A DNA stretch of 64,000 nt, from positions 186,001-250,000 of IMG/VR virus record IMGVR_UViG_3300049460_000128; one strand, written 5' to 3'. Numbering within the stretch: the first letter of the stretch is position 1; every line of letters starts with the position of its first letter. The translations under genes were made by a program, and so were the position numbers. Positions 13,594 through 46,184 of the stretch are shown piece by piece. The notes beneath the pieces are model-generated. The model searched no databases. It was given only the letters and a program-made list of their open reading frames with translations, and was not told where the DNA came from.

Positions 13594-13689
13594 ATTATGG
13601 CACCATTTGTTGAGTTACTGCTGACCCATATATCATGTTACGGCGTCATGGATCGTCACCAGTCAGTCGTATGACTCTGGGATGACACC

Positions 13690-16207: not shown

Positions 16208-16231
16208 GATGGCAAGTCTGGCAATATTTCA

Positions 16232-17166: not shown

Positions 17167-17168
17167 GA

Positions 17169-18473: not shown

Positions 18474-18480
18474 AGGTAAA

Positions 18481-18690: not shown

Positions 18691-18923
18691 AGATGAGTGA
18701 GCTTAAAGATTGCGGCGGTGGCATCATCCGAAAATCTAATCTTCAGTAAATGTGGTGCGGTCACTTCGCCATCACCAATAACAGTTCCACCCGCAGTCTT
18801 AATCAGTCGTATGGCGTCATTGGTGACGCCCCAGTACATGCAGTCGATGTACCAAGGGCTAACACTGTCTCGGGGTATAACTTCGATTAGCCATTGTTCT
18901 GGTACTGGAAGGTCGATCATCAA
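18687..18923 (-). CDS. FKLT-family small protein
   Basis: FSDDATAAIFKLTHL. Confidence 0.8.
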   Translation of the reverse strand: MMIDLPVPEQWLIEVIPRDSVSPWYIDCMYWGVTNDAIRLIKTAGGTVIGDGEVTAPHLLKIRFSDDATAAIFKLTHL

Positions 18924-19144
18924 TATGTCAATCTAAAAAGTACCGCTTCTTCTTCGGTTTTGAGGTACAGGTATGGTTCGTCAAATGGCTCGTCAACTTC
19001 AAAGTTTTCACCCAACAGTTCTTTGAGAATTGGTTTCGCATACTCAGATGGAAACTTTGCCAAAACACAATCATGGAAACATGGAGCCGATTTGATGTCA
19101 ATATCCCAACACCAAAATTTATCTGGCAACGGTACGCGAATCAT
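18920..19144 (-). CDS. FKLT-family small protein
   Basis: LKTEEEAVLFRLTY. Confidence 0.78.
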   Translation of the reverse strand: MIRVPLPDKFWCWDIDIKSAPCFHDCVLAKFPSEYAKPILKELLGENFEVDEPFDEPYLYLKTEEEAVLFRLTY

Positions 19145-19419
19145 TGGAATCGACCTGCAATAAGTTCTTCAGGGAGTTCGCTCGCATCGACGCCATATTG
19201 TAGCTTGAATACTGCTGCTTCTGCTATCTCATTATCTGGAAAGATGGCATACCAGACTGTTGGATCATCGCCTATGTATTTGGGCGAACAGTCATGTGCT
19301 ATTTTTGCCTCATCCAACTCTGCAATGATGACGTTACAACGGGCCAGACCCGCAGTAGCTTCCTCATATGTGGCACCAGGCTTGAATCTATTTTTGATGT
19401 GGAAGATGATTCGAATCAT
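19141..19419 (-). CDS. FKLT-family small protein
   Basis: FPDNEIAEAAVFKLQY. Confidence 0.72.
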   Translation of the reverse strand: MIRIIFHIKNRFKPGATYEEATAGLARCNVIIAELDEAKIAHDCSPKYIGDDPTVWYAIFPDNEIAEAAVFKLQYGVDASELPEELIAGRFQ

Positions 19420-19655
19420 AGGTGTGTGAGCTTAAAAATGGCTGCTTCGGACTCGGTGGCGAATTCACACCAGAAGATATACGAAATGCTTTTGTCATAT
19501 ATAAACGACGTTGGCAAATCCATCATGCACAGCTTTTTGTTGTCGGTTGGTCTAGCTTCGAGTTTGATGTTGTTATCTGTTAGCATTTGCAGAAATTCAA
19601 CCGTATTTTTGAAGGTGTTCATGAACACCTGGACCTTGATTGTTTGGAGTGCCAT
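19416..19655 (-). CDS. FKLT-family small protein
   Basis: FATESEAAIFKLTHL. Confidence 0.8.
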   Translation of the reverse strand: MALQTIKVQVFMNTFKNTVEFLQMLTDNNIKLEARPTDNKKLCMMDLPTSFIYDKSISYIFWCEFATESEAAIFKLTHL

Positions 19656-19909
19656 TACATGTAGGTGAGTTTGAAGATTGCTGCTTGTGTATCGTCGGCA
19701 AATACCACCACAACTTCAACATCATATTGCTCGTTGAGATACGAAAGCGAATAACCCTCGTCTTTGAGTTGGCGCTCAAGAACTGCACGACGTTCTTCTT
19801 CAATGATCCATTCAGATTTAGACCATATCTTCTCACGCATAAATGCGTACTTCAAATAGGAGTACAGGTAATGGCTTCTCATTGATGATGTCCGTATTTC
19901 AGTTTCCAC
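19655..19909 (-). CDS. FKLT-family small protein
   Basis: FADDTQAAIFKLTYM. Confidence 0.8.
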   Translation of the reverse strand: METEIRTSSMRSHYLYSYLKYAFMREKIWSKSEWIIEEERRAVLERQLKDEGYSLSYLNEQYDVEVVVVFADDTQAAIFKLTYM

Positions 19910-20148
19910 ATGACTGCTTCTTCATCACTGTTAAACACCAGATGGATATCCCAGTTAACTTTTTCTGGTTTCAACGTGTAGGCTTCAGCAGGCAATGGTT
20001 GTCTTGCGATAACCCAACCCGGGAAATCGAAACGTACACCAGTCATGTCGATGCCAATAGGTACCATTACGCGCTTGAACATGGAAGTGTACGTTGAGGG
20101 ATGAGTCACGTACTCTATCCACGAGTTTGGTACTCGTATTCTGGTCAT
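19879..20148 (-). CDS. FKLT-family small protein
   Basis: FNSDEEAVMWKLKY. Confidence 0.76.
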   Translation of the reverse strand: MTRIRVPNSWIEYVTHPSTYTSMFKRVMVPIGIDMTGVRFDFPGWVIARQPLPAEAYTLKPEKVNWDIHLVFNSDEEAVMWKLKYGHHQ

Positions 20149-20351
20149 AGGTGTGTCAACTTAAACATTGCGGCATCTTCTTCTGTATCGAATTCCATCC
20201 ATGCCTTTATCAAAATCGGGCGCATCATGAGTCCATTATATTCGGACTGACGTACGACTGGATGATTTTCGTTCTCCAACTTGTGTACACAGCGTATGGC
20301 CTCAACGGTAGATGGTGTGCCATACATGTCAAATAATAAAATCTTGATCAT
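20145..20351 (-). CDS. FKLT-family small protein
   Basis: FDTEEDAAMFKLTHL. Confidence 0.8.
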   Translation of the reverse strand: MIKILLFDMYGTPSTVEAIRCVHKLENENHPVVRQSEYNGLMMRPILIKAWMEFDTEEDAAMFKLTHL

Positions 20352-20557
20352 AGGTGCGTCAATTTGAACAATGCAGCTTCATCTTCGGTATCAAACCACA
20401 TGTAGATCCACGAGTCATCCATTGCATATTGATAGCCCAGACGAATGATCTTAACACCCATGGCATCTACTTTGGACCAATCACGCCGCATTGCTGGCAC
20501 CGCCGGGTCTTCTGGTAACTTGATGACATTTAGACGGATCATATTCTGAGCTTCCAT
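20348..20557 (-). CDS. FKLT-family small protein
   Basis: FDTEDEAALFKLTHL. Confidence 0.8.
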   Translation of the reverse strand: MEAQNMIRLNVIKLPEDPAVPAMRRDWSKVDAMGVKIIRLGYQYAMDDSWIYMWFDTEDEAALFKLTHL

Positions 20558-20739
20558 ATGGCGTATGCGGCCTCATTGGGGAATTCAATATACCATTTCA
20601 AATGACGTCCCACCTTTTCATACTTGAAAATACTGCCATCAAGCCGTGCTAAGTCGATTTGCTTTGAGACCAATTCATATCGTTCTTTAGTTACATCGTC
20701 TTCTTCTTCCGAATCTAACACCTTGATTGTTATGGTCAT
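20539..20739 (-). CDS. FKLT-family small protein
   Basis: FPNEAAYAIWKLRI. Confidence 0.72.
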   Translation of the reverse strand: MTITIKVLDSEEEDDVTKERYELVSKQIDLARLDGSIFKYEKVGRHLKWYIEFPNEAAYAIWKLRI

Positions 20740-20954
20740 AGGTGCGTGAGTTTAAAAAGCATAGCTTCCTCTTCGGTCTCAAATTCCCAATAAGCCTGAA
20801 CAAGCCCTTCTGTTTCTTCCCGCACGATTGGGCGTGGTAAGTCAGGATGAGCAGACACCCAGGTTGCAGCGGCGCCGCGTAACTTCAAATGGAGCATAAT
20901 AGTGTTTCCTGATACACCAATTGCGCCCAATTCACGAAAGATTACCTTAGCCAT
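20736..20954 (-). CDS. FKLT-family small protein
   Basis: FETEEEAMLFKLTHL. Confidence 0.8.
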   Translation of the reverse strand: MAKVIFRELGAIGVSGNTIMLHLKLRGAAATWVSAHPDLPRPIVREETEGLVQAYWEFETEEEAMLFKLTHL

Positions 20955-21177
20955 GCAATGACTCCCAATTGGTTAATTTGTACAGGGCAGCTTCTTCTTC
21001 AGTCTCAAACTCAACATAAGCTTGCACGAGACCCTGACCTTGGTTACGGGTGACTGGACGTTGCTGTGAAGGATTTTTGACGTGCCAGCGATTGTATTTC
21101 ATCATCAACCACATTTCAGTTGTGAGGGCCGCCGAGTTGGAATTGGTTTGACGTTCGTCAATGATCAATCGAAACAT
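20947..21177 (-). CDS. FKLT-family small protein
   Basis: FETEEEAALYKLTNW. Confidence 0.78.
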   Translation of the reverse strand: MFRLIIDERQTNSNSAALTTEMWLMMKYNRWHVKNPSQQRPVTRNQGQGLVQAYVEFETEEEAALYKLTNWESLHG

Positions 21178-21179
21178 GA

Positions 21180-21398
21180 TTACATGTGAGTGAGTTTGAA
21201 GAGGAGCGCCTCTTCATCGTTGGGAAATTCCCAATAGAGATAAATTTCTTCGTCTGTTTCGTCAATACTGAGTAGTGGCATCCAGTTAAATTGATTGCGC
21301 CAACCATAACTAATAAGCCTCACATCAAAGCGCTGCATGTCTTGCATAAAGTCATCGCCAGTACTGAGAGGCTCGCGGTATACTATTAGTCGATACAT
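21180..21398 (-). CDS. FKLT-family small protein
   Basis: FPNDEEALLFKLTHM. Confidence 0.8.
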   Translation of the reverse strand: MYRLIVYREPLSTGDDFMQDMQRFDVRLISYGWRNQFNWMPLLSIDETDEEIYLYWEFPNDEEALLFKLTHM

Positions 21399-21401
21399 GA
21401 T

Positions 21402-21423
21402 AAAAGGGGATTGCTCCCCTTCC
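21402..21423 (-). terminator. Terminator-like hairpin inside the array
   Basis: GGGGA-GCAA-TCCCC followed by CTTTT. Confidence 0.65.
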
Positions 21424-21453
21424 CTTACTTAATTGCTTCATTGAATAGTTACA

Positions 21454-21678
21454 TCAAGTAGCACCCGGCCACCTGTGACTCAATTTGTACATCATGGCTT
21501 CTTCCTCATCATCGAACAGAAAGTAAACACTGATGCCTTTCTTGCCGCCACGCATTTGAAGAAGTTCCTCGTCGAGCGCCGCACTGTTATTCCAGTTACT
21601 CATAAATTCCCACAAGATATCCCATGACCCAACAGGATACGGGTGAGGAACAAAGCGGACGACGAGTTCGTACATCAT
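21454..21678 (-). CDS. FKLT-family small protein
   Basis: FDDEEEAMMYKLSH. Confidence 0.75.
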   Translation of the reverse strand: MMYELVVRFVPHPYPVGSWDILWEFMSNWNNSAALDEELLQMRGGKKGISVYFLFDDEEEAMMYKLSHRWPGAT

Positions 21679-22649: not shown

Positions 22650-23393
22650 ATGACATATCAATGCCAAGAATGCACCAAATCATTCACCACAAGGTCTGGG
22701 TTGACCGGCCACAGTCAAACACATAAGGTCAAGAAGCCTATTGTGATGAAAGAATGCTCTATTTGTTTTACTGAATTTGATGCAATGGTCAGACGAAAGA
22801 ATGGCCAATACGTGGTGAAAGAAACATGCTCAGATGACTGTCATTTGGCATTGAGAATAACCAGAGCTACTATGACCAAACGTCCTGATGTTATTTCTCT
22901 TGGCAAAAGTGTACATGGTGACAAGTTTGACTATTCACAAACTGTTTATGTTGATGCTAAAACTCCAATCATGATAGGATGTCCTATACACGGCAGTGTG
23001 AAAGTAAGTATCTACGGCCATTTGAAAAAATATGGCTGTCCTCGGTGTGGGACTGAAGTGAAGTCTAGAGCATTTGTTGATAATGTATTGAACGCACCAG
23101 GTGGAAAAATATCAAAACAAGAAACTATTTGGCTGGATGAGCTTGGTATAGTGGAAAGACAATATAAAGCTCAAACCAGCCAGCGTTCAATATTAGTTGA
23201 TGGGTATGATGCTATTACAAATACGGTGTATCTATTCCATGGCGTTTTTTGGCATGGCCATCCTGATCATTTTCCAGCAGATCAAATGCATCCAATCAAA
23301 CACGCATCATACGGAGAGCTATATGAAAAGACCCTCTTCGAAGAGGGTCTTTTGCGTGATGCTGGTTATAACGTGATTAGTAAATGGGGATAA
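22650..23393 (+). CDS. Zinc-finger plus PD-(D/E)xK/Vsr-like endonuclease, putative free-standing homing endonuclease
   Basis: C2H2 finger CQECTKSFTTRSGLTGHSQTH; further CxxC and CPIHG..H..GCPRC motifs; C-terminal VDGYDAITNTVYLFHGVFWHG; on the opposite strand to all neighbours. Confidence 0.75.
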   Translation: MTYQCQECTKSFTTRSGLTGHSQTHKVKKPIVMKECSICFTEFDAMVRRKNGQYVVKETCSDDCHLALRITRATMTKRPDVISLGKSVHGDKFDYSQTVYVDAKTPIMIGCPIHGSVKVSIYGHLKKYGCPRCGTEVKSRAFVDNVLNAPGGKISKQETIWLDELGIVERQYKAQTSQRSILVDGYDAITNTVYLFHGVFWHGHPDHFPADQMHPIKHASYGELYEKTLFEEGLLRDAGYNVISKWG

Positions 23394-24413
23394 TCATTTG
23401 CCGATGACATTGTCAAACAGGAAGCAATGTGCTCTTGTGGCCACATTATAACCACGAGCAATTGCGCCTTCAGCGACCTTGGCTTGAACCAAACGTTGAC
23501 CCGCCGCGGTGGCACCTACGGGCATGATCCAAACAGGCCAGGTGACGCCAGCAGCGCGGAACAAAGCAGTCGCACGTTCTACCTCATCCCATGCACGATC
23601 GCTGCCATCCGACACGAATTTCAGCTGGCCGGCGTTGCTGAGCGCAGCATACGCGGCTACGATTTCTGGCTTGATGGCGTCATCCCATTTTTCGCCACTC
23701 AGGAACAGTTTAGGCGACACAGACCAGAACCACTCAACACCCTGAAGTGCTTCAACGGCAGGAGGTAGGCCCGTGAACGAATCAGCGCACAGATTTTGCA
23801 GGTCAGTCATGTAGAAGCTTTGCTGCATGGCTTCGCTGTCGATGGTATCAGCATCTGGGAAATGACCGCTCAGATAGCTGGAGAATTTGTCGCGTGCCTT
23901 TTGCGTGCCGTTTGTTTCAACAGTCACGTACTTGGGCATGTTGCCGCGCTTTGCGAACTCTAGCATGATGTCCACGATTGCGTTCTGGGACATCATTGGC
24001 TCGCCGCCCGTAAAGGCCATGTGAGTCCATTGACCAGACTTTGGATGCAGGAAACGACCGTCGGGATTGCTTGGCGATTTCAGGAAGGCTTCCAGCTCAT
24101 CACAGATCTTTTCCACCGACCCTTTGCGGGCAAGGTGTGCGTATTTTTTCGACCACGAATACGAGCTGTCACAACCTTTATTGAACACTGGAAGTTCTTC
24201 CATGCTCTTGTAAGGGGTGATGTCGATCTTGCGGTAATCCAAATCCCATGTTTCAGGCTGATCTGGATTCGTTTGGCCGAAGCCCTCACATTCGAAGTTA
24301 CAGCCCCAGAAACGGATCCAAATTGTCGGAATACCGGTGTATCTTCCTTCGCCCTGGATTGTGTTACCAAAAATCTCAGAGTACTGGTACTCTTTAATGC
24401 GTGTAGTAGTCAT
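23394..24413 (-). CDS. queE: QueE-like radical SAM 7-carboxy-7-deazaguanine synthase
   Basis: EIFGNTIQGEGRYTGIPTIWIRFWGCNFEC...GCDS, FTGGEP, VETNGT, WSVSPKL. Confidence 0.85.
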   Translation of the reverse strand: MTTTRIKEYQYSEIFGNTIQGEGRYTGIPTIWIRFWGCNFECEGFGQTNPDQPETWDLDYRKIDITPYKSMEELPVFNKGCDSSYSWSKKYAHLARKGSVEKICDELEAFLKSPSNPDGRFLHPKSGQWTHMAFTGGEPMMSQNAIVDIMLEFAKRGNMPKYVTVETNGTQKARDKFSSYLSGHFPDADTIDSEAMQQSFYMTDLQNLCADSFTGLPPAVEALQGVEWFWSVSPKLFLSGEKWDDAIKPEIVAAYAALSNAGQLKFVSDGSDRAWDEVERATALFRAAGVTWPVWIMPVGATAAGQRLVQAKVAEGAIARGYNVATRAHCFLFDNVIGK

Positions 24414-24472
24414 TGTATTTCAATGTAATGTGGTGTTGCCATTCTAGACAGAAGACTTGAGTCAATCAATAG

Positions 24473-24500
24473 AAAAATATGGGCCACGAAGGCCCATATT
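24473..24500 (-). terminator. Rho-independent terminator
   Basis: ATATGGGCC-TTCGT-GGCCCATAT-TTTT. Confidence 0.75.
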
Positions 24501-24695
24501 TCACAACTTCTTCAAATATTCATACGCCTCAGCCAAATTCCAAAACTTTTTGGAGAATGACTTTAGGAATATGGTTCTGCCTGAATGTTCTGCATACACA
24601 TCGACCGATAGGTTAAAGACACCATATGACTCGGTTAACGTGTAGCTATTTGAACGTTTACTGGATCGGCGCCAGCCAACTAGATGATATGCCAT
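24501..24695 (-). CDS. Hypothetical protein
   Basis: 64 aa ORF. Confidence 0.5.
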   Translation of the reverse strand: MAYHLVGWRRSSKRSNSYTLTESYGVFNLSVDVYAEHSGRTIFLKSFSKKFWNLAEAYEYLKKL

Positions 24696-24763
24696 TTACG
24701 CTAATGAACTCCTACAACGACATTATAGCACAATCGTGCTGAAGTTGCTGTAGGCAAACAAGT

Positions 24764-25042
24764 TCATTCAGTAATTTCAACGAGCTTATAGATACGATAC
24801 GCGCCACGTGGATTGATCACTTGACCGCGTGAGTCAACCTTGCCTTCACGGCGCAGCTGGCTCTCTTCCTGACGGTTGCAATAGTCACGAAACCCTTCTG
24901 CATCTTTCATCGTACCATATTGATTGGTACCACCGTAAGAGTAAAAGCCCACATGACCATCTGGCTTTTCAGGATACCAGGGCCGGCCGACAGCATAGTT
25001 GAATTGTTCGCTCATTCGTATTCCCAAGGATAGACGATCCAT
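24764..25042 (-). CDS. Hypothetical protein
   Basis: 92 aa ORF overlapping the PRT gene end. Confidence 0.6.
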   Translation of the reverse strand: MDRLSLGIRMSEQFNYAVGRPWYPEKPDGHVGFYSYGGTNQYGTMKDAEGFRDYCNRQEESQLRREGKVDSRGQVINPRGAYRIYKLVEITE

Positions 25043-25539
25043 TCTGGCTTTTCGATCTTGTTGATCTCTTCGCCAGAATAGTCTGGACTGAACAGTGTAG
25101 CACCTAAATTGTGCTGCAACACTGCAACTCGAATACGTGCCATGTCGTATGTTTCAAGATCAACATCATAGCCATTGGCTTCAGCAACTGCGGTTGCCAT
25201 ATCGCGAGCATTGGCGAGATGGGTTTCCAACTGTTGGTGAATTTCATGCAGGGTATGACCTTCATCACAGATGTCGTCTACGATGAGCACTCGTTTATTG
25301 CTACGAATAACTTCCACCAATTTTTCAATTGGGTCGGCACCTGGATGATCACGAAGAGAATACTTGAAAGCAACCATAGGTACATCGTAGTAGTGGCTGA
25401 CATGCACGGCAGGAATCATCCCACCGCGCACAAGACCTACCACGATATCTGGTTTGTACTCATCGAGAGCCATTTGACGATACATGACATTCAGCATGTC
25501 GTGCATATCAGTGTAACCGAGATATCGTTTCTTGATCAT
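25012..25539 (-). CDS. Type I purine phosphoribosyltransferase (Gpt/Xpt-like)
   Basis: VVGLVRGG, PRPP loop VLIVDDICDEGHTL, C-terminal WIVYPWE. Confidence 0.88.
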   Translation of the reverse strand: MIKKRYLGYTDMHDMLNVMYRQMALDEYKPDIVVGLVRGGMIPAVHVSHYYDVPMVAFKYSLRDHPGADPIEKLVEVIRSNKRVLIVDDICDEGHTLHEIHQQLETHLANARDMATAVAEANGYDVDLETYDMARIRVAVLQHNLGATLFSPDYSGEEINKIEKPEWIVYPWEYE

Positions 25540-26213
25540 TTGATGTGCTTGACCGAATTCAGGAATTCAGTACGCATACCCAGTTCAGTGCGGAACTTAC
25601 CACCCATGTAGGTAGTAATGGTCGAACTCGTGGAGTCTTCAACACCGCGGGTTTGAACGCACATGTGTTCAGCATCCAGGTGGACTGCTACATCATCCGT
25701 TTTCAGAATGAACTTCAGTGCTTCAGCGATCTGAACGGTCAGACGCTCTTGGATCTGTGGACGACGTGCGAAGTATTCCACGATACGATTCAGCTTGCTC
25801 AGACCCAGTACGGTGCCATTTGGCATGTAGGCAATAGTTGCTTTGCCGATGATTGGGACCAAGTGGTGTTCGCAGTTCGATTGAACCGTGATACCAGTTT
25901 CAACAACCATTTGATCGTAGTTGATTTTGTTTTCAACTGCGGTACACTTTGGGAAATTCTCAGGATCCAGACCCCAGAAGATTTCGCTGGTGTACATTTT
26001 GGCAACGCGCAATGGAGTTTCCATCAGGCTGTCATCTTTCAGATCCATACCCAGAGTTTCCAGAATGCTCGTTACAGCTTTCTCGATCTTGGAGATCTTT
26101 TGTTTGATAGTCAGACCGTTGTCGATCATTGGAGTTTGCAGACCCAACGATTCCAGGTGTGCTTGAACTTGCTTACCCAATTCCGGGTCGGTTTTTGTTT
26201 TGTTAAAAGACAT
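25536..26213 (-). CDS. folE: GTP cyclohydrolase I
   Basis: ETPLRVAKMY, SNCEHH, GLSKLNR, RRPQIQERLT, HMCVQTRG. Confidence 0.95.
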   Translation of the reverse strand: MSFNKTKTDPELGKQVQAHLESLGLQTPMIDNGLTIKQKISKIEKAVTSILETLGMDLKDDSLMETPLRVAKMYTSEIFWGLDPENFPKCTAVENKINYDQMVVETGITVQSNCEHHLVPIIGKATIAYMPNGTVLGLSKLNRIVEYFARRPQIQERLTVQIAEALKFILKTDDVAVHLDAEHMCVQTRGVEDSTSSTITTYMGGKFRTELGMRTEFLNSVKHIK

Positions 26214-26245
26214 CAGCTACCTCTTATAGCGTAAATTGTTATGAA

Positions 26246-26360
26246 CTATGACCTCTTGCCATAGCTATGTGGGAATCATCGATCAACATGACACGGTAAA
26301 GAACGGCTCTCGTGGCCGGTTACGGGACGTCATGTTAGTCAACTAGGACTTTGTCCACAT
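26246..26360 (-). promoter_or_regulatory. Candidate structured cis-regulatory leader of folE
   Basis: Several nested inverted repeats between TAAATA (26362-26367) and the folE start. Confidence 0.5.
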
Positions 26361-26434
26361 CTATTTATGAACTCAATTAAGTATCATACAAACATGATAG
26401 CAAGTTGAGATCATGGCTCATAATTAAAGTTGAA

Positions 26435-27412
26435 TTATTTCGTGTACCACTTGTAGGCACTACCGATGATGGACTCGATATTCGAGAAGAATGGAGTCCA
26501 ATGCAATACGTCATGTGCCTCATCAGCATTGGCGATAAGTTCTGCTGGATCACCAGCACGGATGGGACCAACTTCAAGATCGAACATGCCATAACGCTCA
26601 GTCACGTAGTCGATGATCTGCTGATTACTGATGCCCTGGTTGGTGCCAAGATTCAATACTCGTGCTTGTGGTGTGTCATCGGTCAACGTCAACTCAAAAG
26701 CTTTGATGTGTGCTTGTGCGATATCCCAGACGTGGATATAGTCACGAACGCAAGTACCATCAGCTGTTGGATATTCGTTGCCATTCAACACGAAGGTCGT
26801 GTTGTTGATCTTTGCTTCAAGAACACGGGCAACGATATGAGTTGCACCTGGTTCTTGACCCAAGTCTGATGTTCCTGGCATTGCGCCAGCGGCATTGAAG
26901 TAACGGAAGCAGACACTCGGAATGCCGTAAGCTGACTGATAATCAGCCAGGATTTGTTCGGTCATTGCCTTCGTCTTGCCGTAAGGGCTGATGGGATTGA
27001 CGAGATCGCTCTCAAACGCTGGAACGTTAGCTTCGCCGTACACACTAGCGGATGAGCTGAACAATACGACTGGTGACTTCTCCATGTCTTTCAGAGCATT
27101 CAGCAGTTTGATGGTCTTCAACACATTGTTTTCGTAGTATTCGGCTGGATTCTTCACTGAAGGACCAACCAAGCTGGTACCAGCACAATGAACGATCAGG
27201 TCTGGTTTCATGTCAACGATGCCCTGAAGTGTACCCTCATTGGCGAAGTCGTCCATGATAAACCAGTCAACATCTTTCAACGTGTGACCACGACGCACAC
27301 GGTCAACAACTACCATCTTGCAATCAGGATAATGTTGCTTGAATGCGCGTACGATGTGGCTTCCAATGTAGCCGCAGCCACCTGTTACCACTATTGTTTT
27401 TTTATCTGACAT
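26435..27412 (-). CDS. galE: UDP-glucose 4-epimerase
   Basis: GGCGYIGSH, VGPSV, FSSSASVYG, YGKTK, FRYFNAAG, RDYIHVWD. Confidence 0.92.
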   Translation of the reverse strand: MSDKKTIVVTGGCGYIGSHIVRAFKQHYPDCKMVVVDRVRRGHTLKDVDWFIMDDFANEGTLQGIVDMKPDLIVHCAGTSLVGPSVKNPAEYYENNVLKTIKLLNALKDMEKSPVVLFSSSASVYGEANVPAFESDLVNPISPYGKTKAMTEQILADYQSAYGIPSVCFRYFNAAGAMPGTSDLGQEPGATHIVARVLEAKINNTTFVLNGNEYPTADGTCVRDYIHVWDIAQAHIKAFELTLTDDTPQARVLNLGTNQGISNQQIIDYVTERYGMFDLEVGPIRAGDPAELIANADEAHDVLHWTPFFSNIESIIGSAYKWYTK

Positions 27413-27454
27413 AAATTTCTCGTTTGAATGGGATTGCGGACAACCCCGTACATC

Positions 27455-28630
27455 TTAATACTTCGCAGTACTGGTGTGTTTACGATAATCCGTATCCATA
27501 CGCAACCACTCTTCGCCATTACCCTCAACGATGTCCAGGATACGGTCGATAGTGCCATCATTGTGATCCGAAATCTTGCCGATGTTGCGATGCGGTGCAT
27601 CCAGCAGTTTTTCCAGTTTCAGCAATGCATCTTCCAGACTCCAAGGCACGTACAGGCGCTCGTAGTCATTCGCGAAGGTCTCTGGGAATGAACGATAAGC
27701 TGGGTACAGGACATTCGAACCCAGAGCATCACCTTCGCTCACAGTATTGCTGACCCAATCCTGCAACGCACAGTTGAACAGCACACGAGTGTCATTCAGC
27801 AAGGCGTAGTATTCGTTCTTTTGCAAGCCTTCATGAATGGTCAGAATGCCTTTGGCTTGCAGGTCGCGAGTGCGAGCCATATAGCTGTCGTTGTTGCTCT
27901 TCAGCGCGCCACCTGACATCAGACAAAACTCAACAGGACGATTTGGATGCAAACGCTTCCATTCTTCAGCCAAGTCCATGAAGAAGTCAGGTTGCTTTTC
28001 CTGATCCCAACGCGCAGCAAAGCCAACACGATATGCACGTTCATGGAACGGCTTGATCGAGTCAACACGGCCTACAACTTCTTGTTTGCCAAATGCCAAG
28101 CCCGAGATGTTGTAGATTGGGGCCGTCCAACCAGCAATCTTCATGTGAGCGACCATTTCTTCGTTGGTGGCCAGCACACCGTCAACGAACGAGTCAACCA
28201 TCTTCTCATACAGACCCATCCACTTTTCCATCTTCCACACGTGAACGAAATCATCTGGGTCGATAGTTTGCGCCAAGCAGCGGACGAACACTTTCGGGCG
28301 ATTACTTGCTGGGGTTTGATCCATGATGTATGGCAAGCTTTCGATGCCAGGGGTGTACATGTCTTCAAACAAGATTACGTCGTCGCTGGTAACTTCGCCG
28401 TCTTTCATCATCTTGACCAGACGTGCCATCTGTGTCATTGAGTAGTAGGAACGACCGTGTGCGTCAAGGACTTGCCCAGTAACGATAGCCTTGCTGTTGT
28501 CCAGGTTATCGCCTTCGACAGTCACGAAGTCAACATCGCGACGTTTGAATACTGCTTCATACCATTGCTGCAACTGGTAGGTGTATCGTGCTTGGTAACT
28601 TTCCAAGCCAATATGAAAAAGCTTTCTCAT
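27455..28630 (-). CDS. GT-B fold glycosyltransferase (GT4-like)
   Basis: RWDQEKQP; C-terminal QDWVSNTVSEGDALG resembling the EX7E region; upstream of galE. Confidence 0.78.
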   Translation of the reverse strand: MRKLFHIGLESYQARYTYQLQQWYEAVFKRRDVDFVTVEGDNLDNSKAIVTGQVLDAHGRSYYSMTQMARLVKMMKDGEVTSDDVILFEDMYTPGIESLPYIMDQTPASNRPKVFVRCLAQTIDPDDFVHVWKMEKWMGLYEKMVDSFVDGVLATNEEMVAHMKIAGWTAPIYNISGLAFGKQEVVGRVDSIKPFHERAYRVGFAARWDQEKQPDFFMDLAEEWKRLHPNRPVEFCLMSGGALKSNNDSYMARTRDLQAKGILTIHEGLQKNEYYALLNDTRVLFNCALQDWVSNTVSEGDALGSNVLYPAYRSFPETFANDYERLYVPWSLEDALLKLEKLLDAPHRNIGKISDHNDGTIDRILDIVEGNGEEWLRMDTDYRKHTSTAKY

Positions 28631-28676
28631 CTATTATCCTCTTGGGAATCTGTGTTCCCTGTTTTCTTATCCGGCT

Positions 28677-28705
28677 ATTATACGCCACATCAAGTATTTG
28701 ACCAA
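28677..28705 (-). promoter_or_regulatory. sigma70-like promoter TTGGTC-N17-TATAAT
   Basis: Upstream of the glycosyltransferase-galE genes. Confidence 0.6.
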
Positions 28706-28712
28706 ATACTTC

Positions 28713-29099
28713 CTAGTAGTCTTCTGCCGTTTTCAATACAGGGATCCAGCCAAGATCCCTGAAGTGTTGAAGCACGTTATCTAGAACATCAGTCAACTCA
28801 TCCATGTACATGAATACGTAAGTGCTTGTGATTTTGTGATGTGACCAACGAAGTGTTTCAATGATTTGATGTGCGTATCGGTGGGAGCATGCCCACTTAC
28901 GGCGTGAATCGTAGGTGTCCATTGACAGGGCATCAATGACTTGACTTGCTTCGTCTTGGGTGACATCTCGCTGCTTGAACCACTTATATCGTGCGATCAC
29001 GGTATAAAGTTGTCGTGACGTGTCGTCCTCAATCAGCATCTCCACCAAAGCCGGCGAAGTGCTGATATCGGTTTCTAGATCAACGATCCAATCACTCAT
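28713..29099 (-). CDS. Hypothetical protein
   Basis: 128 aa ORF. Confidence 0.6.
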   Translation of the reverse strand: MSDWIVDLETDISTSPALVEMLIEDDTSRQLYTVIARYKWFKQRDVTQDEASQVIDALSMDTYDSRRKWACSHRYAHQIIETLRWSHHKITSTYVFMYMDELTDVLDNVLQHFRDLGWIPVLKTAEDY

Positions 29100-29460
29100 A
29101 CTTGAAGGTCTGCGTCATACGACCTTCCGTGATGGTGATTTCTTGGACTGGGATGATCAGCAGAGTGGCGAACTCATCCTCGATAGCATCCGTCAATTCT
29201 TCAGATATCATAGCCAACGTTTTGTGATCGGCCGTCAGGGTCTTGTTTTTGTACAGTTCATTCAACCATACCGAAACTTCCGGATGAGTCATAACATCCA
29301 GAACATCAGCATACAGCTTAACCTGGATGTCAATCGAATGACGGAAGACTTGCTTGCTCGTTGGTGCAGCCATCACAACGGTGGGATCACCACTGCCGTC
29401 AATATGCAATACACGAGTCACAACCAGATTACAGCCAAGGATCACTTGAGTTGGTTTCAT
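29092..29460 (-). CDS. Hypothetical protein
   Basis: 122 aa ORF coupled to the queD-like gene. Confidence 0.6.
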   Translation of the reverse strand: MKPTQVILGCNLVVTRVLHIDGSGDPTVVMAAPTSKQVFRHSIDIQVKLYADVLDVMTHPEVSVWLNELYKNKTLTADHKTLAMISEELTDAIEDEFATLLIIPVQEITITEGRMTQTFKYE

Positions 29461-29864
29461 TTCTCACCTTTGAATGACATGATGGCGCCGTTTTCGCCGT
29501 CTTCCGCGACTTCAATCGTGGCGTCACGACCAGGATATTTGGCCTTGATTTCATTCCACAGATCGGTGGCAATCATCTCGCACGATTTGAAGTCAAGTTC
29601 AAGCGTGCCGCCCTTGTACAGGTTTTCCAGCCAGCGTTTGAACTGGATAAACTCGATGTCACGGTCAGCATGGAAAATGTCTAGAGTGACGCGGAAATGG
29701 AAGATGTGACGATGTGGATATCCCAGGAACGAAACATCGTATTCATCGCCAGTAGCCAGACTTGGATCAGTCAATGCTGCGGGATATTTGTGGGTGCCCT
29801 CTTTCTGGAAGGTCACGAAGATCTTGGATGCGACCAAGTCTTCAGATGGAGTAAATGCTGCCAT
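29457..29864 (-). CDS. queD: QueD-like 6-carboxytetrahydropterin synthase (T-fold)
   Basis: HRHIFH metal ligands, SCEMIA, IEVAEDGENGA; 135 aa; folE/queE context. Confidence 0.72.
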   Translation of the reverse strand: MAAFTPSEDLVASKIFVTFQKEGTHKYPAALTDPSLATGDEYDVSFLGYPHRHIFHFRVTLDIFHADRDIEFIQFKRWLENLYKGGTLELDFKSCEMIATDLWNEIKAKYPGRDATIEVAEDGENGAIMSFKGEK

Positions 29865-30824: not shown

Positions 30825-31186
30825 TTGTCAGCCCAGGTTAATTTGTACAAGACAGCATCATCCATATTGACGAACACGTAGCCATACATCGCATTGTTGA
30901 AGTCGTGCTTTTTGTCAAGTAAGGGGATGAACTTGTATGTTTTTACTCCCTTGGATTGTATCCACTCCTTGCACTCTGGTGTCCGCAATTGACGAATAAC
31001 ATCAGCCAACGGCATTAGTACCAGAGTGTGATCTGCATGCCACTTATACGTTTGTGGATCAACGACCACGTAGCCACATTCATCCATTGCCGGATCTGCC
31101 AAGTCATAGTTGTTTCCAAACCAGACATGCGGGTCGCAACCTTGCAGTTTGCATTTTTGATTTATTTCTTGCTGAACTTGTTCCAT
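30821..31186 (-). CDS. FKLT-family protein (second cluster)
   Basis: FVNMDDAVLYKLTW. Confidence 0.72.
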   Translation of the reverse strand: MEQVQQEINQKCKLQGCDPHVWFGNNYDLADPAMDECGYVVVDPQTYKWHADHTLVLMPLADVIRQLRTPECKEWIQSKGVKTYKFIPLLDKKHDFNNAMYGYVFVNMDDAVLYKLTWADK

Positions 31187-31722
31187 AGCATCAAATCGAA
31201 GTCAGCTGGAGTCATATTCACTTTCTTGGCTTCTGCCAAGAAAGCTTGCTCCAATACTGGATATTGTTTCGGGCTGGGCGTGCCGGTTGGTACATCATAG
31301 CCAAGCGTTCCCAGGTACTTTGTGATGTGGCGATCTAACACCGCGATGTTTTGATTTGGGCGACTGTGGATCAAAAAGAACCTTGCTGTTTTGTCACCCA
31401 CACCCGTTATGGCTTTCAGCCCGTCAACATCAACCGTGCGCAAATTCAATGCAACACTTTGAGCAAAGCCTTGTGTCAAACGAGTATATTGCCCCAGTCG
31501 TGCTTCTTTCAAATTCGCCGCCAAGGTATCTTTGCTCATCATAACCCGAATACGATCAAATGGCGAACCTGATGTTTCAATCAACAGGAACTTTTCCAAT
31601 GCCCTAGCTTGCGTCCTTGCGGTCTTACCAGCAACTACCTGACAGAACAGCCAATACAATTCTAACTCGGCATCAGTCCTCGTGTAATTGGTTACGATAG
31701 TTGGATCAACAAGTAAATTCAT
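31162..31722 (-). CDS. HhH-GPD DNA glycosylase-like (Ogg2/8-oxoguanine glycosylase-like)
   Basis: HhH LKAITGVGDKTARFFL with a Lys; AVLDRHI with the conserved Asp. Confidence 0.75.
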   Translation of the reverse strand: MNLLVDPTIVTNYTRTDAELELYWLFCQVVAGKTARTQARALEKFLLIETSGSPFDRIRVMMSKDTLAANLKEARLGQYTRLTQGFAQSVALNLRTVDVDGLKAITGVGDKTARFFLIHSRPNQNIAVLDRHITKYLGTLGYDVPTGTPSPKQYPVLEQAFLAEAKKVNMTPADFDLMLWNKFSKK

Positions 31723-33230: not shown

Positions 33231-33241
33231 TAATACCTGAA

Positions 33242-33583
33242 CTATAGCCAGGTAAGCTTGAACATCACGGCATCTTCCAGCGCCCTAAAACCAAACAATG
33301 TTAAGCATTGCACTCTAGAATTTTTGCCAACTACATACCACACTGGCGTTTTAGTGACCGGATAGCCAATTTCTGATAGAAATTCATCCCAAGCGGTAGG
33401 GGTTTTGAACTTTAGGGTGGCAGATGGCACCAGGATGTACTGTGTATTTTGCGAATTTATAAGTGGCAAAAACTTGTTACCATCAATAACGTATTTCGTT
33501 TGATCATCTATAATTCGCAGAAATGACAAATTGTCAGACAGAATGTGAATAGGATGGGGCACGCCCTTGAGATTAACTATCAT
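33242..33583 (-). CDS. FKLT-family protein (second cluster)
   Basis: FRALEDAVMFKLTWL. Confidence 0.74.
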   Translation of the reverse strand: MIVNLKGVPHPIHILSDNLSFLRIIDDQTKYVIDGNKFLPLINSQNTQYILVPSATLKFKTPTAWDEFLSEIGYPVTKTPVWYVVGKNSRVQCLTLFGFRALEDAVMFKLTWL

Positions 33584-33906
33584 GGATAGGTCAACTTGAA
33601 CAAAACGGCTTGAGTTTCATCTTTGAAGCCAAACATCATAACGGCATCAAGCTCTCGCCCATTTTCGACCGGATACACGGGGCCCATGATCACTCGGGAA
33701 AAGTCCGGATTGTTAACTATGTCAAGCGAAATGACACGAGAATGCTGATACGGACGTATCAAACAATGCACACAATCCGCGTAGACATTTTTCATGAATG
33801 GCGAACGATATACATCAGTTGAGTTACGGATACCGTTGAATGATACAGGGCCTATGCCTGGTAGAATTACTTGCATGAATACTCCTTTGTTGTCAGTATA
33901 AAGCAA
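33580..33906 (-). CDS. FKLT-family protein (second cluster)
   Basis: FKDETQAVLFKLTYP. Confidence 0.74.
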   Translation of the reverse strand: MLYTDNKGVFMQVILPGIGPVSFNGIRNSTDVYRSPFMKNVYADCVHCLIRPYQHSRVISLDIVNNPDFSRVIMGPVYPVENGRELDAVMMFGFKDETQAVLFKLTYP

Positions 33907-46160: not shown

Positions 46161-46184
46161 ATCATGTCTACCTACCAGTAAAAA

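What the first reader, a model, noticed from the sequence alone, without database searches (positions are those of the whole stretch)
23394..29864. 7-deazaguanine pathway (folE, queD-like, queE) physically merged with a purine PRTase, GalE and a glycosyltransferase; no queC/dpdA in view
Established: FolE, QueD and QueE convert GTP to 7-carboxy-7-deazaguanine (CDG). QueC makes preQ0, and DpdA transglycosylases insert deazaguanines into phage DNA. Seen: here these three genes are interleaved with a GT-B glycosyltransferase and galE, and folE is coupled (ATGA) to a Gpt-like PRTase. No queC, dpdA or tgt lies in the window. Inference: a possibly undescribed route in which the PRTase salvages a deazaguanine base to a nucleotide for pre-replicative incorporation, and/or the base is glycosylated with a UDP-Gal-type sugar. 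The product would be a sugar-decorated deazaguanine in DNA or tRNA.
Basis: partly seen in the sequence, partly recalled or inferred. Interest (0 to 1): 0.82.

Follow-up and report, generated by a model that had tools for sequence, protein, structure and literature searches.

The report
Sugar-linked 7-deazaguanine DNA modification cassette
This jumbo-phage gene cluster belongs to a widespread, uncharacterised version of the phage system that swaps guanine in DNA for 7-deazaguanine. Here that system is tightly joined to a sugar-adding enzyme and a purine salvage enzyme, which suggests a new sugar-decorated DNA base that shields the phage from host nucleases.

Summary
One needs relabelling. The 135-aa "queD-like" protein is DpdL, the QueD paralogue with the LxxxHRHxF motif that has been proposed as a CDG decarboxylase. 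No true QueD, QueC or DpdA/TGT lies in the 64 kb.

The clustering is not chance:
- DpdL sits beside this GT4-like GT-B glycosyltransferase in 77 of 80 related IMG/VR loci.
- The same pairing occurs in five cultured phage lineages and next to three GT homologs only about 30% identical.
- The Gpt-like PRTase occurs in only 21 of 50,697 phage records, all of them 7-deazaguanine phages. These include the two lineages shown to replace 100% of G.
- The PRTase lies between or next to QueE and FolE in four lineages.

A TGT-superfamily DpdA lies next to DpdL in 69 of 80 relatives and coexists with the PRTase in 20 of 26 loci. The PRTase is therefore an addition to DpdA, not a replacement. In this phage DpdA is probably encoded outside the window, as it is in its relative Phosso.

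Best reading: a glycosylated 7-deazaguanine DNA hypermodification. The PRTase either recycles excised guanine or activates the deaza base. This is a new variant of a known kind, its chemistry is untested, and it is of high interest.

The parts
29457..29864 (-). DpdL (135 aa). A T-fold QueD paralogue with the LxxxHRHxF motif (LGYPHRHIF), proposed to be a CDG decarboxylase.
   Evidence: The motif and its invariant residues show in alignment A1. It is 72% identical to Phosso, 55% to ACP17 gp125 and 33% to phiST CGPG_00067. The family is defined in PMC10516641. The family HMM gives E=2.6e-73. There is no Pfam PTPS hit.
29092..29460 (-). Degenerate DpdL paralogue (122 aa). It has lost the His motif, and its stop overlaps the DpdL gene.
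   Evidence: The DpdL HMM gives E=3.3e-7. BLAST to ACP17 DpdL and to the window's DpdL gives E of about 1e-3 to 4e-4. No homolog was found in the other 79 loci.
28713..29099 (-). Orphan 128-aa ORF between the DpdL paralogue and the GT. Function unknown.
   Evidence: It has no Pfam, NCBIfam or PHROG hit. Among the 80 loci it is found only in the window's own contig.
27455..28630 (-). GT-B fold, GT4-like (retaining-type) glycosyltransferase (391 aa), the conserved partner of DpdL. The predicted donor is a UDP-hexose. The acceptor is proposed to be 7-deazaguanine, either free or in DNA.
   Evidence: The AlphaFold model has pLDDT 94.2 and pTM 0.91. Foldseek top hits are SPS, BshA, MshA, SenB and PimA, with E of about 1e-12 and TM 0.6-0.7. 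R207, E211 and K212 are invariant, and there is a D291-x7-E299 motif. It is 65% identical to BUCT-ZZ01. It is adjacent to DpdL in 77 of 80 loci. The family has 798 clusters at 50% identity.
26435..27412 (-). GalE, UDP-glucose 4-epimerase (325 aa). It probably supplies UDP-Gal (or UDP-Glc) to the GT.
   Evidence: TIGR01179 scores 291 bits against a cutoff of 262. PF01370 gives E=7.5e-45. GalE is present in 34 of 80 related loci, usually just after the GT.
25536..26213 (-). FolE, GTP cyclohydrolase I (225 aa), the first step from GTP.
   Evidence: NF006824 scores 300.6 bits against a cutoff of 202. PF01227 gives E=2e-63. FolE is present in 64 of 80 loci.
25012..25539 (-). Gpt-like type I purine phosphoribosyltransferase (175 aa). 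Its start overlaps the folE stop (ATGA).
   Evidence: PF00156 scores 52.6 bits. PDB matches are 1vdm (E=1.9e-12) and GpT-1/2. The PRPP loop is VLIVDDICDEGHT. The overlap is visible. The family occurs only in 7-deazaguanine phages. It is present in 26 of 80 loci.
24764..25015 (-). 83-aa ORF translationally coupled to the PRT gene by a second ATGA. Function unknown.
   Evidence: The sequence is. It has no family hit. It was not found in the other loci.
24474..24502 (-). Terminator-like hairpin with a 12-bp stem followed by a T-run. It separates the FolE-PRT unit from queE. A promoter-like site follows at 24441-24469.
   Evidence: The overall site counts there are not above the shuffled expectation, so only the strong hairpin is noteworthy.
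23394..24413 (-). QueE-like radical SAM enzyme (339 aa), predicted CDG synthase. It has a CX3C-X38-C cluster motif.
   Evidence: phrog_2076 gives E=3.4e-47. The N-terminal QGEG and cluster region aligns to E. coli and B. subtilis QueE structures 6nhl and 5tgs. Cys38, Cys42, Cys81, QGEG and GGE are invariant in 30 homologs. It scores below the NCBIfam QueE cutoffs.
31162..31722 (-). HhH-GPD (EndoIII/Ogg-like) DNA glycosylase-like protein (186 aa, pI 9.5), 1.3 kb upstream of DpdL. It may be associated with the cassette.
   Evidence: PF22175 Ogg-HhH scores 25.7 bits against a cutoff of 27. The motifs GVGDKTAR and VLDRH are present. hhalign gives 82% probability against the Phosso 'glycosylase' that directly precedes DpdL.

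Best explanation
The cluster is one member of a large, so far uncharacterised branch of the phage 7-deazaguanine DNA-modification systems. The conserved core of this branch is DpdL plus a GT4-like glycosyltransferase.

Proposed pathway:
1. FolE converts GTP to H2NTP.
2. A QueD converts H2NTP to CPH4. This QueD is not in the window, so it is the host's or is encoded elsewhere.
3. The QueE-like radical SAM enzyme makes 7-carboxy-7-deazaguanine (CDG).
4. DpdL removes the carboxyl group to give 7-deazaguanine. This is the proposal of Cui et al. and is unproven.
5. A TGT-superfamily DpdA exchanges the product for guanine in phage DNA. DpdA is adjacent in most relatives. Here it is presumably encoded outside the window, as in phage Phosso.
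6. The glycosyltransferase adds a hexose from a UDP-sugar, either to the base before insertion or to the deazaguanine already in DNA. GalE provides UDP-Gal or UDP-Glc.
7. The Gpt-like PRTase is translationally coupled to FolE. It most simply recycles the guanine released by base exchange into GMP, then GTP, which is FolE's substrate.

The expected result is a hexosyl-7-deazaguanine in virion DNA that blocks restriction and other nucleases.

Shown by homology or structure: the identities of FolE, GalE, the PRT fold, the GT-B fold, the QueE-like radical SAM protein and DpdL family membership, plus the gene linkages. Inferred: every chemical step after CDG, the acceptor and atom that is glycosylated, the PRTase substrate, and the presence of a DpdA in this genome.
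For: Gene identities.

DpdL-GT linkage:
- It holds in 77 of 80 IMG/VR loci, with the conserved order pol - clamp - DpdA - c7 (173 aa) - DpdL - c3 (77 aa) - GT - (GalE) - FolE / PRT - QueE.
- It holds in BUCT-ZZ01, Phosso, ACP17, PA5oct, and the Xanthomonas and Burkholderia phages.
- It holds next to three GT homologs about 30% identical, in family-A-polymerase phages or other mobile elements. One of these (L193) was confirmed by HMM to carry DpdA-like, DpdL, GT and QueE genes together.

DpdA: the upstream ~510-aa protein carries the TGT motif LGDSGGFQ. The top three PDB fold matches of its model are archaeosine TGT, the DNA preQ0 insertase DpdA and QTRT1/2. Phosso keeps its copy 170 kb from the cluster.

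Sugar supply: related loci carry variable sugar-nucleotide genes. These are GalE, a DegT-like aminotransferase, a cytidylyltransferase and a second GT, as expected if the sugar is diversifying.

Phenotype in relatives: PA5oct DNA resists enzymes with G in their recognition sites, and its modification is still unidentified (PMC12191111). phiST has DpdL without the GT and has plain dDG (PMC10516641).

Chemical precedent: GTs are known to glycosylate free 7-deazapurines, as in huimycin HuiG (bioRxiv 10.64898/2026.04.15.718813).

PRTase: the family is confined to deazaguanine phages. It retains the residue equivalent to the HGPRT general-base Asp. Its nearest cellular relatives are stand-alone salvage-type PRTs.
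Against: - No DpdA of any of four types was found in the window. Two targeted scans did not retrieve one on the window's contig.
- 7-deazaguanine has no obvious hydroxyl for O-glycosylation. The attachment atom (N2, a ring carbon, or another) is speculative.
- DpdL's decarboxylase activity has never been demonstrated; heterologous tests failed.
- The GT's closest solved structures act on small molecules, not DNA. It is no closer to phage DNA glucosyltransferases than to generic GT4 enzymes.
- GalE (34 of 80 loci) and the PRTase (26 of 80) are accessory, not universal.
- There is no direct chemical evidence for a sugar on any of these phage DNAs.
Confidence: 0.5

Rival explanations
1. Nucleotide-level (pre-replicative) route, essentially the first reader's idea. 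The PRTase acts like TubE or ToyH and condenses the deaza base (CDG or 7-deazaguanine) with PRPP. DpdL decarboxylates at the base or nucleotide level. Kinases and ribonucleotide reductase yield 7-deaza-dGTP, which the phage polymerase incorporates. DpdA is dispensable or has another role. The GT decorates the base or nucleotide, or the DNA afterwards.
For: - TubE is a proven CDG-specific PRTase in a QueC-less pathway that also needs a decarboxylase (PMC6112128).
- The phage PRT family is found only in 7-deazaguanine phages. These include phiST-like phages (dDG, 100% of G) and Flavobacterium immuto_2-6A (fdPreQ1, 100% of G).
- The PRT gene is embedded between or next to QueE and FolE in four lineages.
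- phiST has a MazG-like NTP pyrophosphatase beside DpdL, and its PRT lies near the RNR gene.
- DpdA3 activity could not be shown experimentally.
- The window and L019 have the PRT but no adjacent DpdA.
- Cui et al. never considered a PRTase.
Against: - The PRTase coexists with an adjacent DpdA in 20 of 26 loci, and with DpdA3 in immuto and phiST. It therefore does not substitute for DpdA.
- Only 26 of 80 DpdL-GT loci have the PRTase.
- It keeps the Asp that acts on N7 in 6-oxopurine PRTs.
- Its closest cellular homologs are stand-alone PRTs that are not linked to FolE or QueE.
- No dGTP-clearing enzyme or dedicated kinase was found in the window.
Confidence: 0.25
2. The GT and GalE are unrelated to deazaguanine. 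They glycosylate something else, such as another modified base, a phage or host protein, or a host surface glycan, and merely share the replication-gene neighbourhood.
For: - GT4 enzymes are generic, and the top structural matches are small-molecule or polysaccharide enzymes.
- GalE is present in only 34 of 80 loci.
- 7-deazaguanine has no obvious chemical handle for a sugar.
Against: - The GT sits next to DpdL, often with overlapping or near-abutting genes, in 77 of 80 loci. This holds across unrelated backbones, including T4-like, jumbo and family-A polymerase phages and an element with a resolvase.
- All 23 cultured-phage records with the GT family also carry QueE-like or DpdL genes.
Confidence: 0.1
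3. The products are small molecules rather than nucleic-acid bases. Candidates are a glycosylated pterin (as in cyanobacterial pteridine glycosides made from FolE, a PTPS-type enzyme and a glucosyltransferase) or a huimycin-like glycosylated deazapurine or nucleotide, used to manipulate host metabolism or immunity.
For: - FolE, a PTPS-fold protein and a GT is also the logic of pterin glycoside synthesis (my own knowledge, not tested here).
- HuiG-type glycosylation of free deazapurines exists.
- The GT's structural neighbours act on small acceptors.
- No DpdA is present in this window.
Against: - A TGT-superfamily DpdA is adjacent in 69 of 80 loci.
- The cassette sits among replication genes.
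- PA5oct DNA itself is modified at G.
- phiST DNA carries dDG.
Confidence: 0.08

Closest known systems
Phage dDG system of Cellulophaga phage phiST and ACP17-type phages (FolE, QueD, QueE, DpdL, DpdA; Cui et al. 2023, PMC10516641)
   Same: It shares FolE, a QueE-like enzyme and DpdL with the LxxxHRHxF motif, has no QueC, and sits next to replication genes. ACP17 itself carries the same DpdA-GT-DpdL-QueE arrangement.
   Different: - The GT4-like glycosyltransferase, GalE and the PRTase are not part of the published scheme.
- phiST lacks the GT and has plain dDG.
- The DpdA in most relatives is a ~510-aa family, or phrog_10773, rather than the 259-aa DpdA3.
- The window has neither QueD nor DpdA.
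Tubercidin and toyocamycin biosynthesis (TubE and ToyH deazapurine PRTases; PMC6112128)
   Same: It combines GTP cyclohydrolase I, CDG synthase and a type I PRTase with a decarboxylation step and no QueC. TubE uses CDG plus PRPP.
   Different: - The phage decarboxylase candidate is a T-fold protein, not UbiD.
- The phage cluster has no GMP-reductase or Nudix tailoring genes.
- The phage PRTase was not compared with TubE or ToyH, because no sequences were available through the tools.
- Its nearest cellular relatives are unclustered salvage-type PRTs.
Huimycin and dapiramicin glycosylated 7-deazapurines (HuiG glycosyltransferase)
   Same: A GT-B type glycosyltransferase uses a UDP-sugar to glycosylate a 7-deazaguanine-derived base.
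   Different: - These are secondary metabolites of actinomycetes built from preQ0 after O-methylation.
- They have no link to DNA.
- Homology between HuiG and the phage GT was not tested.
T-even phage glucosyl-hmC system (alpha- and beta-glucosyltransferases)
   Same: The concept is the same: a phage replaces a base and then decorates it with a UDP-sugar through a GT-B enzyme, and the sugar chemistry diversifies between phages.
   Different: - The base is different (hmC, made pre-replicatively).
- The phage GT here is no closer to a cyanophage DNA alpha-GT than to generic GT4 enzymes (rank 22, TM about 0.5).
Pseudomonas jumbo phage PA5oct (Wroclawvirus) 'modified G'
   Same: PA5oct gp168 (DpdA-like), gp167 (GT), gp166 (DpdL), gp163 (PRT) and gp162 (QueE) form the same cassette. 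Its DNA resists restriction at sites containing G.
   Different: PA5oct keeps DpdA adjacent and has no GalE in the locus. The chemical identity of its modification is unpublished in the texts I could search.

Membership tests
DpdL (QueD paralogue, proposed CDG decarboxylase) | Signature LxxxHRHxF in place of the QueD motif CxxxHGH | tested here: met
   The window has L47-G-Y-P-H51-R-H53-I-F55. L47, H51, H53 and F55 are invariant in A1 and A7. The motif is defined.
DpdL (QueD paralogue, proposed CDG decarboxylase) | Sequence homology to the named members (phiST CGPG_00067 and the ACP17 homolog) | tested here: met
   Identity is 33% to phiST (E=1.5e-13) and 56% to ACP17 gp125 (E=7e-47).
DpdL (QueD paralogue, proposed CDG decarboxylase) | T-fold (PTPS-like) structure | tested here: inconclusive
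   hhalign of the shallow DpdL and QueD alignments gave only 40% probability, over the C-terminal part. No PDB sequence hit was found. A distant homolog's neighbour carries a weak PF01242 hit. No structure was predicted.
DpdL (QueD paralogue, proposed CDG decarboxylase) | CDG decarboxylase activity | not testable with these tools
   The activity is also unproven in the literature.
QueD (CPH4 synthase) | Catalytic Cys in CxxxHG(H/Y) and a PF01242 match | tested here: not met
   No ORF in the window matches PF01242 or the phage QueD HMM. The 135-aa protein has Leu at the Cys position.
QueE (7-carboxy-7-deazaguanine synthase) | Radical SAM three-Cys cluster site plus the N-terminal substrate motif (QGEG) and the GGE SAM motif | tested here: met
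   Cys38, Cys42, Cys81, QGEG 20-23 and GGE 136-138 are invariant in 30 homologs. The spacing is the unusual CX3C-X34-40-C.
QueE (7-carboxy-7-deazaguanine synthase) | Score above the curated QueE equivalog cutoffs | tested here: not met
   The best NCBIfam score is 41.6 bits against a cutoff of 200, and only the N-terminal 40 residues match. It does match the phage family phrog_2076 over its full length, the family to which the QueE-like gene of Vibrio phage nt-1 belongs.
GTP cyclohydrolase I FolE | Score above the curated equivalog cutoff | tested here: met
   NF006824 scores 300.6 against 202, and TIGR00063 scores 232.8 against 181.6.
GalE UDP-glucose 4-epimerase | Score above the curated equivalog cutoff | tested here: met
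   TIGR01179 scores 291.3 against 262.3.
6-oxopurine PRTase (Gpt/Hpt type) | Type I PRT fold with a PRPP loop and the acidic residue following it | tested here: met
   PF00156 scores 52.6 bits. The loop is VLIVDDICDEGHT. PDB matches are 1vdm and GpT-1/2.
6-oxopurine PRTase (Gpt/Hpt type) | Score above the curated XPRT or HGPRT equivalog cutoffs, or demonstrated substrate specificity | tested here: not met
   The best NCBIfam score is 31.6 bits against a cutoff of 138. The substrate cannot be inferred.
Deazapurine PRTase (TubE/ToyH) | Homology to TubE or ToyH, or clustering of cellular homologs with CDG genes | tested here: inconclusive
   No TubE or ToyH sequence was available. In phages the family is always in deazaguanine genomes.
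GT-B / GT4-like glycosyltransferase | Two-Rossmann GT-B fold with a C-terminal nucleotide-sugar site (K/R plus an E/D-x7-E motif) | tested here: met
   The model has pLDDT 94. Foldseek probability is 1.00 against BshA, MshA, SPS and PimA. R207, K212 and D291-x7-E299 are conserved. Pfam GT1 hits are sub-threshold and seen only in homologs.
DpdA / TGT superfamily (in the window) | TIM-barrel transglycosylase with a DSGG(F/L)Q catalytic motif | tested here: not met
   No motif, HMM or phmmer hit occurs in any of the six frames. Relatives do have it.
QueC / preQ0 branch | A QueC (PF06508) gene | tested here: not met
   No hit in any scanned ORF. None was seen in the related loci either.

The most novel reading that the evidence does not exclude
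These phages, which are abundant in environmental viromes and include the cultured PA5oct, ACP17, BUCT-ZZ01 and Phosso, carry a previously unknown DNA base: a glycosylated 7-deazaguanine. It is made by the DpdL-GT pair. The sugar may be attached by an unusual N- or C-glycosidic bond, because 7-deazaguanine has no hydroxyl. In addition, the conserved Gpt-like PRTase would reveal a nucleotide-level (pre-replicative) or guanine-recycling arm of 7-deazaguanine DNA modification. That arm would explain complete G replacement in phiST-type and immuto-type phages, contrary to the current view that all such modifications are purely post-replicative.
Probability: 0.35. Interest if true: 0.9.

Novelty: new variant of a known kind. 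Interest (0 to 1): 0.78.

Why it matters
7-Deazaguanine DNA modifications are a major phage counter-defence, and eight derivatives are known, none of them glycosylated. This analysis shows that DpdL is almost always partnered with a dedicated glycosyltransferase family. That family has about 800 clusters at 50% identity and thousands of members. It is often accompanied by sugar-nucleotide genes and a phage-specific PRTase. None of these three components appears in the published pathway schemes.

If the predicted hexosyl-7-deazaguanine exists, the consequences would be:
- It would be a new natural DNA base and possibly a new type of glycosyl transfer chemistry.
- It would identify the unknown 'modified G' of the jumbo phage PA5oct, which is a target of END nucleases.
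- It would affect sequencing, restriction and phage-therapy work on these phages.

The PRTase link also makes a standing question directly testable: how do some phages replace 100% of their guanines?

Tried and rejected
- Near-identity DNA search of the region against 50,697 phage records found no match.
- Sequence-level PDB searches with the GT, DpdL, ACP17 gp123 and the DpdA-like profile found nothing useful.
- Profile-profile comparison of DpdL with QueD on shallow alignments gave only 40% probability.
- Prediction of a DpdL-GT protein complex returned 'no answer' and is evidence neither way.
- Attempts to find a DpdA on the window's own 296.6-kb contig all failed to retrieve that contig:
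  - The scan with a Phosso-type alignment returned 23 loci, none from this contig.
  - The Phosso helicase, used as a synteny anchor, returned only 2 loci.
  - No protein-database hit had a longest contig of 296,594 bp.
  - Walking the contig in 10-kb steps was judged too costly.
  - Repeats in the window were examined as handles for fetching more of the contig, but they are divergent coding repeats.
- Bulk pI cannot tell a DNA acceptor from a small-molecule acceptor for the GT, because the presumed DNA enzyme DpdA is equally acidic.
- I considered that the 391-aa protein might itself be a divergent DpdA3. I rejected this because it is clearly GT-B fold, not a TIM barrel.
- I considered that the QueE-like gene might be an unrelated radical SAM enzyme. 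I kept it as QueE-like because of the QGEG and three-Cys conservation and its constant linkage with FolE and DpdL.
- Promoter and terminator scans were not above the shuffled expectation, apart from one strong hairpin.

Full report
**Source and setting.** The window is bases 186,001-250,000 of the IMG/VR contig IMGVR_UViG_3300049460_000128, which is 296,594 bp long. Almost every gene is on the minus strand. The family-B DNA polymerase is 52% identical to that of Sinorhizobium jumbo phage Phosso (469 kb) and 49% to Atu_ph07. The source is therefore a jumbo myovirus of the T4/Rak2-like superfamily. No phage in the 50,697-record collection is close at the DNA level. The window has no tRNA genes.

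**What the genes are.** Reading 5' to 3' on the minus strand:
- 29864-29457, 135 aa. It matches only phrog_17812, a family of unknown function.
- 29460-29092, 122 aa.
- 29099-28713, 128 aa.
- 28630-27455, 391 aa, with no Pfam or PHROG hit.
- 27412-26435, GalE. TIGR01179 scores 291 bits, above its cutoff.
- 26213-25536, FolE. NF006824 scores 300 bits, above its cutoff.
- 25539-25012, a type I phosphoribosyltransferase. PF00156 scores 52.6 bits.
- 25015-24764, an 83-aa ORF.
- A strong terminator-like hairpin at 24502-24474.
- 24413-23394, a 339-aa QueE-like radical SAM protein. phrog_2076 gives E=3e-47.

The ATGA overlaps between folE and the PRT gene, and between the PRT gene and the 83-aa ORF, are visible in the sequence.

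**The 'queD-like' gene is DpdL.** Cui et al. 2023 (PMC10516641) defined DpdL as a QueD paralogue in which the QueD signature CxxxHGH is replaced by LxxxHRHxF. They proposed it as the CDG decarboxylase that leads to 2'-deoxy-7-deazaguanosine (dDG), but could not show the activity. The window protein reads LGYPHRHIF. It is homologous to phiST CGPG_00067 (33% identity) and to the ACP17 homolog (56%). The 122-aa neighbour is a degenerate paralogue without the His motif (DpdL HMM E=3e-7). No protein in the window matches PF01242 or a phage QueD profile. CPH4 synthesis must therefore rely on the host QueD or on a gene outside the window. In PA5oct the PTPS gene is likewise far from the cluster.

**The QueE-like protein.** Only its N-terminal 40 residues align to curated QueE models or to QueE crystal structures. 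However, the QGEG substrate motif, the GGE SAM motif and three cysteines (C38, C42, C81) are invariant in 30 homologs. The cluster motif has the unusual spacing CX3C-X34-40-C. Vibrio phage nt-1 carries a member of the same family (38% identical). Hutinet et al. list a QueE for that phage.

**The 391-aa protein is a glycosyltransferase.** An AlphaFold model built on 68 diverse homologs has pLDDT 94 and pTM 0.91. It matches GT4-type retaining GT-B enzymes (sucrose-phosphate synthase, BshA, MshA, SenB, PimA) with probability 1.00 and TM 0.6-0.7. R207, E211, K212 and a D291-x7-E299 motif are conserved. The family is large: 798 clusters at 50% identity have E<=1e-3, and a word-indexed search saturated at 8,000 candidates. 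Among viral models the best matches are an unnamed protein and ACP17 gp124. A cyanophage DNA alpha-glucosyltransferase is only rank 22.

**The clustering is conserved, not accidental.**
- Synechococcus phage BUCT-ZZ01 (156 kb, complete) has QueE-PRT-x-QueD-FolE-GT2-DpdA-DpdL-GT.
- Phosso has clamp-'glycosylase'-DpdL-GT-x-FolE-...-QueE.
- ACP17 has QueD-x-FolE-x-DpdA-GT-DpdL-QueE.
- PA5oct has DpdA-GT-DpdL-x-x-PRT-QueE.
- A scan of IMG/VR with the DpdL alignment found at least 588 loci. In the best 80, the counts within the 10-kb flanks were GT in 77, FolE in 64, QueE in 32-33, GalE in 34, PRT in 26 and QueD in 21.
- The typical gene order is pol - clamp - DpdA - c7 (173 aa) - DpdL - c3 (77 aa) - GT - (GalE) - FolE / PRT - QueE.
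- Three GT homologs only about 30% identical to the window's GT, from other kinds of elements, still sit beside a small DpdL-like or weak-PTPS gene and near PTPS, radical SAM or FolE genes. One of them (L193) was confirmed by HMM to have DpdA-like, DpdL, GT and QueE genes together.
- Among cultured phages, all 23 records with the GT family are phages that also have QueE-like or DpdL genes.

**DpdA.** The ~510-aa protein upstream of DpdL in 69 of 80 loci has no Pfam or PHROG match. PA5oct gp168 belongs to this family. It carries the transglycosylase motif LGDSGGFQ. The top three PDB matches of its AlphaFold model (pLDDT 85) are archaeosine TGT, the DNA preQ0 insertase DpdA and QTRT1/2. The TM-scores are low, so this is superfamily-level evidence only. 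ACP17 gp123 and the BUCT 416-aa protein (phrog_10773) carry DSGGLQ.

The window has none of these. There is no motif, and no HMM or phmmer hit for four DpdA types, including DpdA3 of phiST and immuto. Of the loci with enough upstream flank, only the window and L019 lack an adjacent DpdA. Phosso, the nearest cultured relative, encodes a DpdA of this family 170 kb away, beside its primase and helicase. A displaced DpdA is therefore the most economical expectation. Three indirect attempts did not retrieve one on the window's contig. Because relatives have 430-480-kb genomes, the 296-kb contig may be incomplete. This point is unresolved.

**The PRTase.**
- Its best structural relatives are archaeal purine or 6-oxopurine PRTs.
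- It keeps the acidic residue that follows the PRPP loop (VLIVDDICDEGHT).
- Its 80 nearest homologs in bacterial genomes (28-36% identical, mostly Sphingomonadales) have no FolE, QueE or QueD neighbours.
- In phages the distribution is very narrow: only 21 of 50,697 records. These are phiST, phi13:1 and phi19:2 (dDG replacing all G), the Flavobacterium phage immuto group (fdPreQ1 replacing all G), BUCT-ZZ01 and the PA5oct group.
- In immuto_2-6A the gene lies between QueE and FolE, and DpdA3 is five genes downstream. In phiST it lies near the ribonucleotide reductase gene.
- Cui et al. do not mention any PRTase, PRPP or salvage.
- In the 80 loci the PRT coexists with DpdA in 20 of 26 cases. 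It is almost mutually exclusive with a locally encoded QueD (26 against 21 loci, one with both). I cannot explain that pattern.

Two readings of the PRTase fit the data.
- (a) Guanine recycling. Base exchange by DpdA releases one guanine for every deazaguanine inserted. A Gpt-like enzyme coupled to FolE would return that guanine to the GTP pool that feeds the pathway.
- (b) A TubE/ToyH-like activation of the deaza base to a nucleotide. TubE is a proven CDG-specific PRTase in a QueC-less pathway that also requires a decarboxylase (PMC6112128). This would allow pre-replicative incorporation and would neatly explain 100% replacement.

I favour (a) slightly, because DpdA is nearly always present and the N7-directed Asp is retained. 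Reading (b) is a serious rival.

**What the glycosyltransferase does.** The strict DpdL-GT pairing argues that the GT acts on DpdL's product or its DNA form. So does the variable set of sugar-nucleotide genes in the loci: GalE, a DegT-like aminotransferase, a HIT protein, a cytidylyltransferase and a second GT. phiST has DpdL without the GT and has plain dDG. PA5oct has the GT, and its DNA is resistant at G-containing sites with an unidentified modification. HuiG provides precedent for GT-B glycosylation of a free 7-deazapurine. The acceptor atom is unknown, and 7-deazaguanine has no hydroxyl. An exocyclic-N or a C-glycoside are the options, and this is the weakest link in the model. The DpdL-GT complex prediction was uninformative, and so was bulk charge.

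**Verdict.** The glycosylation idea and the involvement of the PRTase gain strong comparative support. The 'no DpdA, hence a PRTase route' inference is weakened by the relatives but not excluded. In the literature I could search I found no description of a glycosylated 7-deazaguanine in DNA, of this GT family, or of the phage PRTase link. I classify it as a new variant of a known kind of system, with a substantial chance of a new DNA base.

Noticed in passing
window 12800-21500 (minus strand), outliers at about 30540, 32520 and 33240-33620: An array of at least 14-18 small paralogous genes of about 65-90 aa. Their 3' ends share a 40-60-nt motif (repeat families D1-D9) and usually overlap the next gene's start. 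Function unknown.
   Followed up: no
window 31162-31722 (-): A 186-aa basic (pI 9.5) HhH-GPD/EndoIII-like DNA glycosylase. It has both the Lys (GVGDKTAR) and the Asp (VLDRH) of the catalytic pair. It is homologous to the Phosso 'glycosylase' that directly precedes DpdL. The two phages whose DpdA is not adjacent to DpdL both have this protein there instead.
   Followed up: partly
window 22650-23393 (+): This is the only clear plus-strand gene in the region. It encodes a 247-aa protein with a C2H2 zinc finger and DUF723, and it abuts the queE stop codon. It looks like a homing-endonuclease-type insertion.
   Followed up: no
window 9660-11627, 57510-59816, 60325-61299 (all -): The phage encodes its own proteostasis set: an FtsH-like AAA plus M41 protease, a ClpB/ClpA-like double-AAA chaperone and a DnaJ.
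   Followed up: no
window 38960-39427, 40209-41225, 42907-43545 (all -): A dual-specificity phosphatase-like protein, a UvdE UV-damage endonuclease and a RyR-domain protein lie downstream of the DNA polymerase.
   Followed up: no
window 23394-24413 and 30 homologs in loci L007-L086: This QueE-like family has a non-canonical radical SAM cluster motif, CX3C-X34-40-C. A 34-40-residue insert separates the second and third cysteines, and all three cysteines are invariant.
   Followed up: partly
IMG/VR loci L007-L086: - The PRT and a locally encoded QueD are almost mutually exclusive (26 against 21 loci, one with both).
- The PRT travels with an unknown 157-aa protein (c28). QueD travels with a DegT-like fragment (c30).
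- Two unknown proteins, c7 (173 aa) and c3 (77 aa), flank DpdL in more than 60 loci but are absent from the window.
   Followed up: partly
L194 (Flavobacterium phage immuto_2-6A, 8980-9375) and L195 (phiST, 5995-6423): Both experimentally verified 100%-G-replacement phages carry the same PRT family. In immuto it lies between QueE and FolE, and in phiST it lies near the ribonucleotide reductase gene. The paper that described their modifications does not discuss this gene.
   Followed up: partly
L193 (Logan SRR12203296 contig, 7.9 kb): A distant DpdA-like / DpdL / GT / QueE cassette sits next to a RES-domain protein and a resolvase. The cassette may therefore also travel on non-phage mobile elements.
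   Followed up: no
window 44045-54533 (-): A run of large fibre or adhesin-like proteins with internal repeats and shared segments (repeat families D10-D15). They match tail-fibre PHROGs and give weak YadA-stalk and flagellin-IN hits.
   Followed up: no
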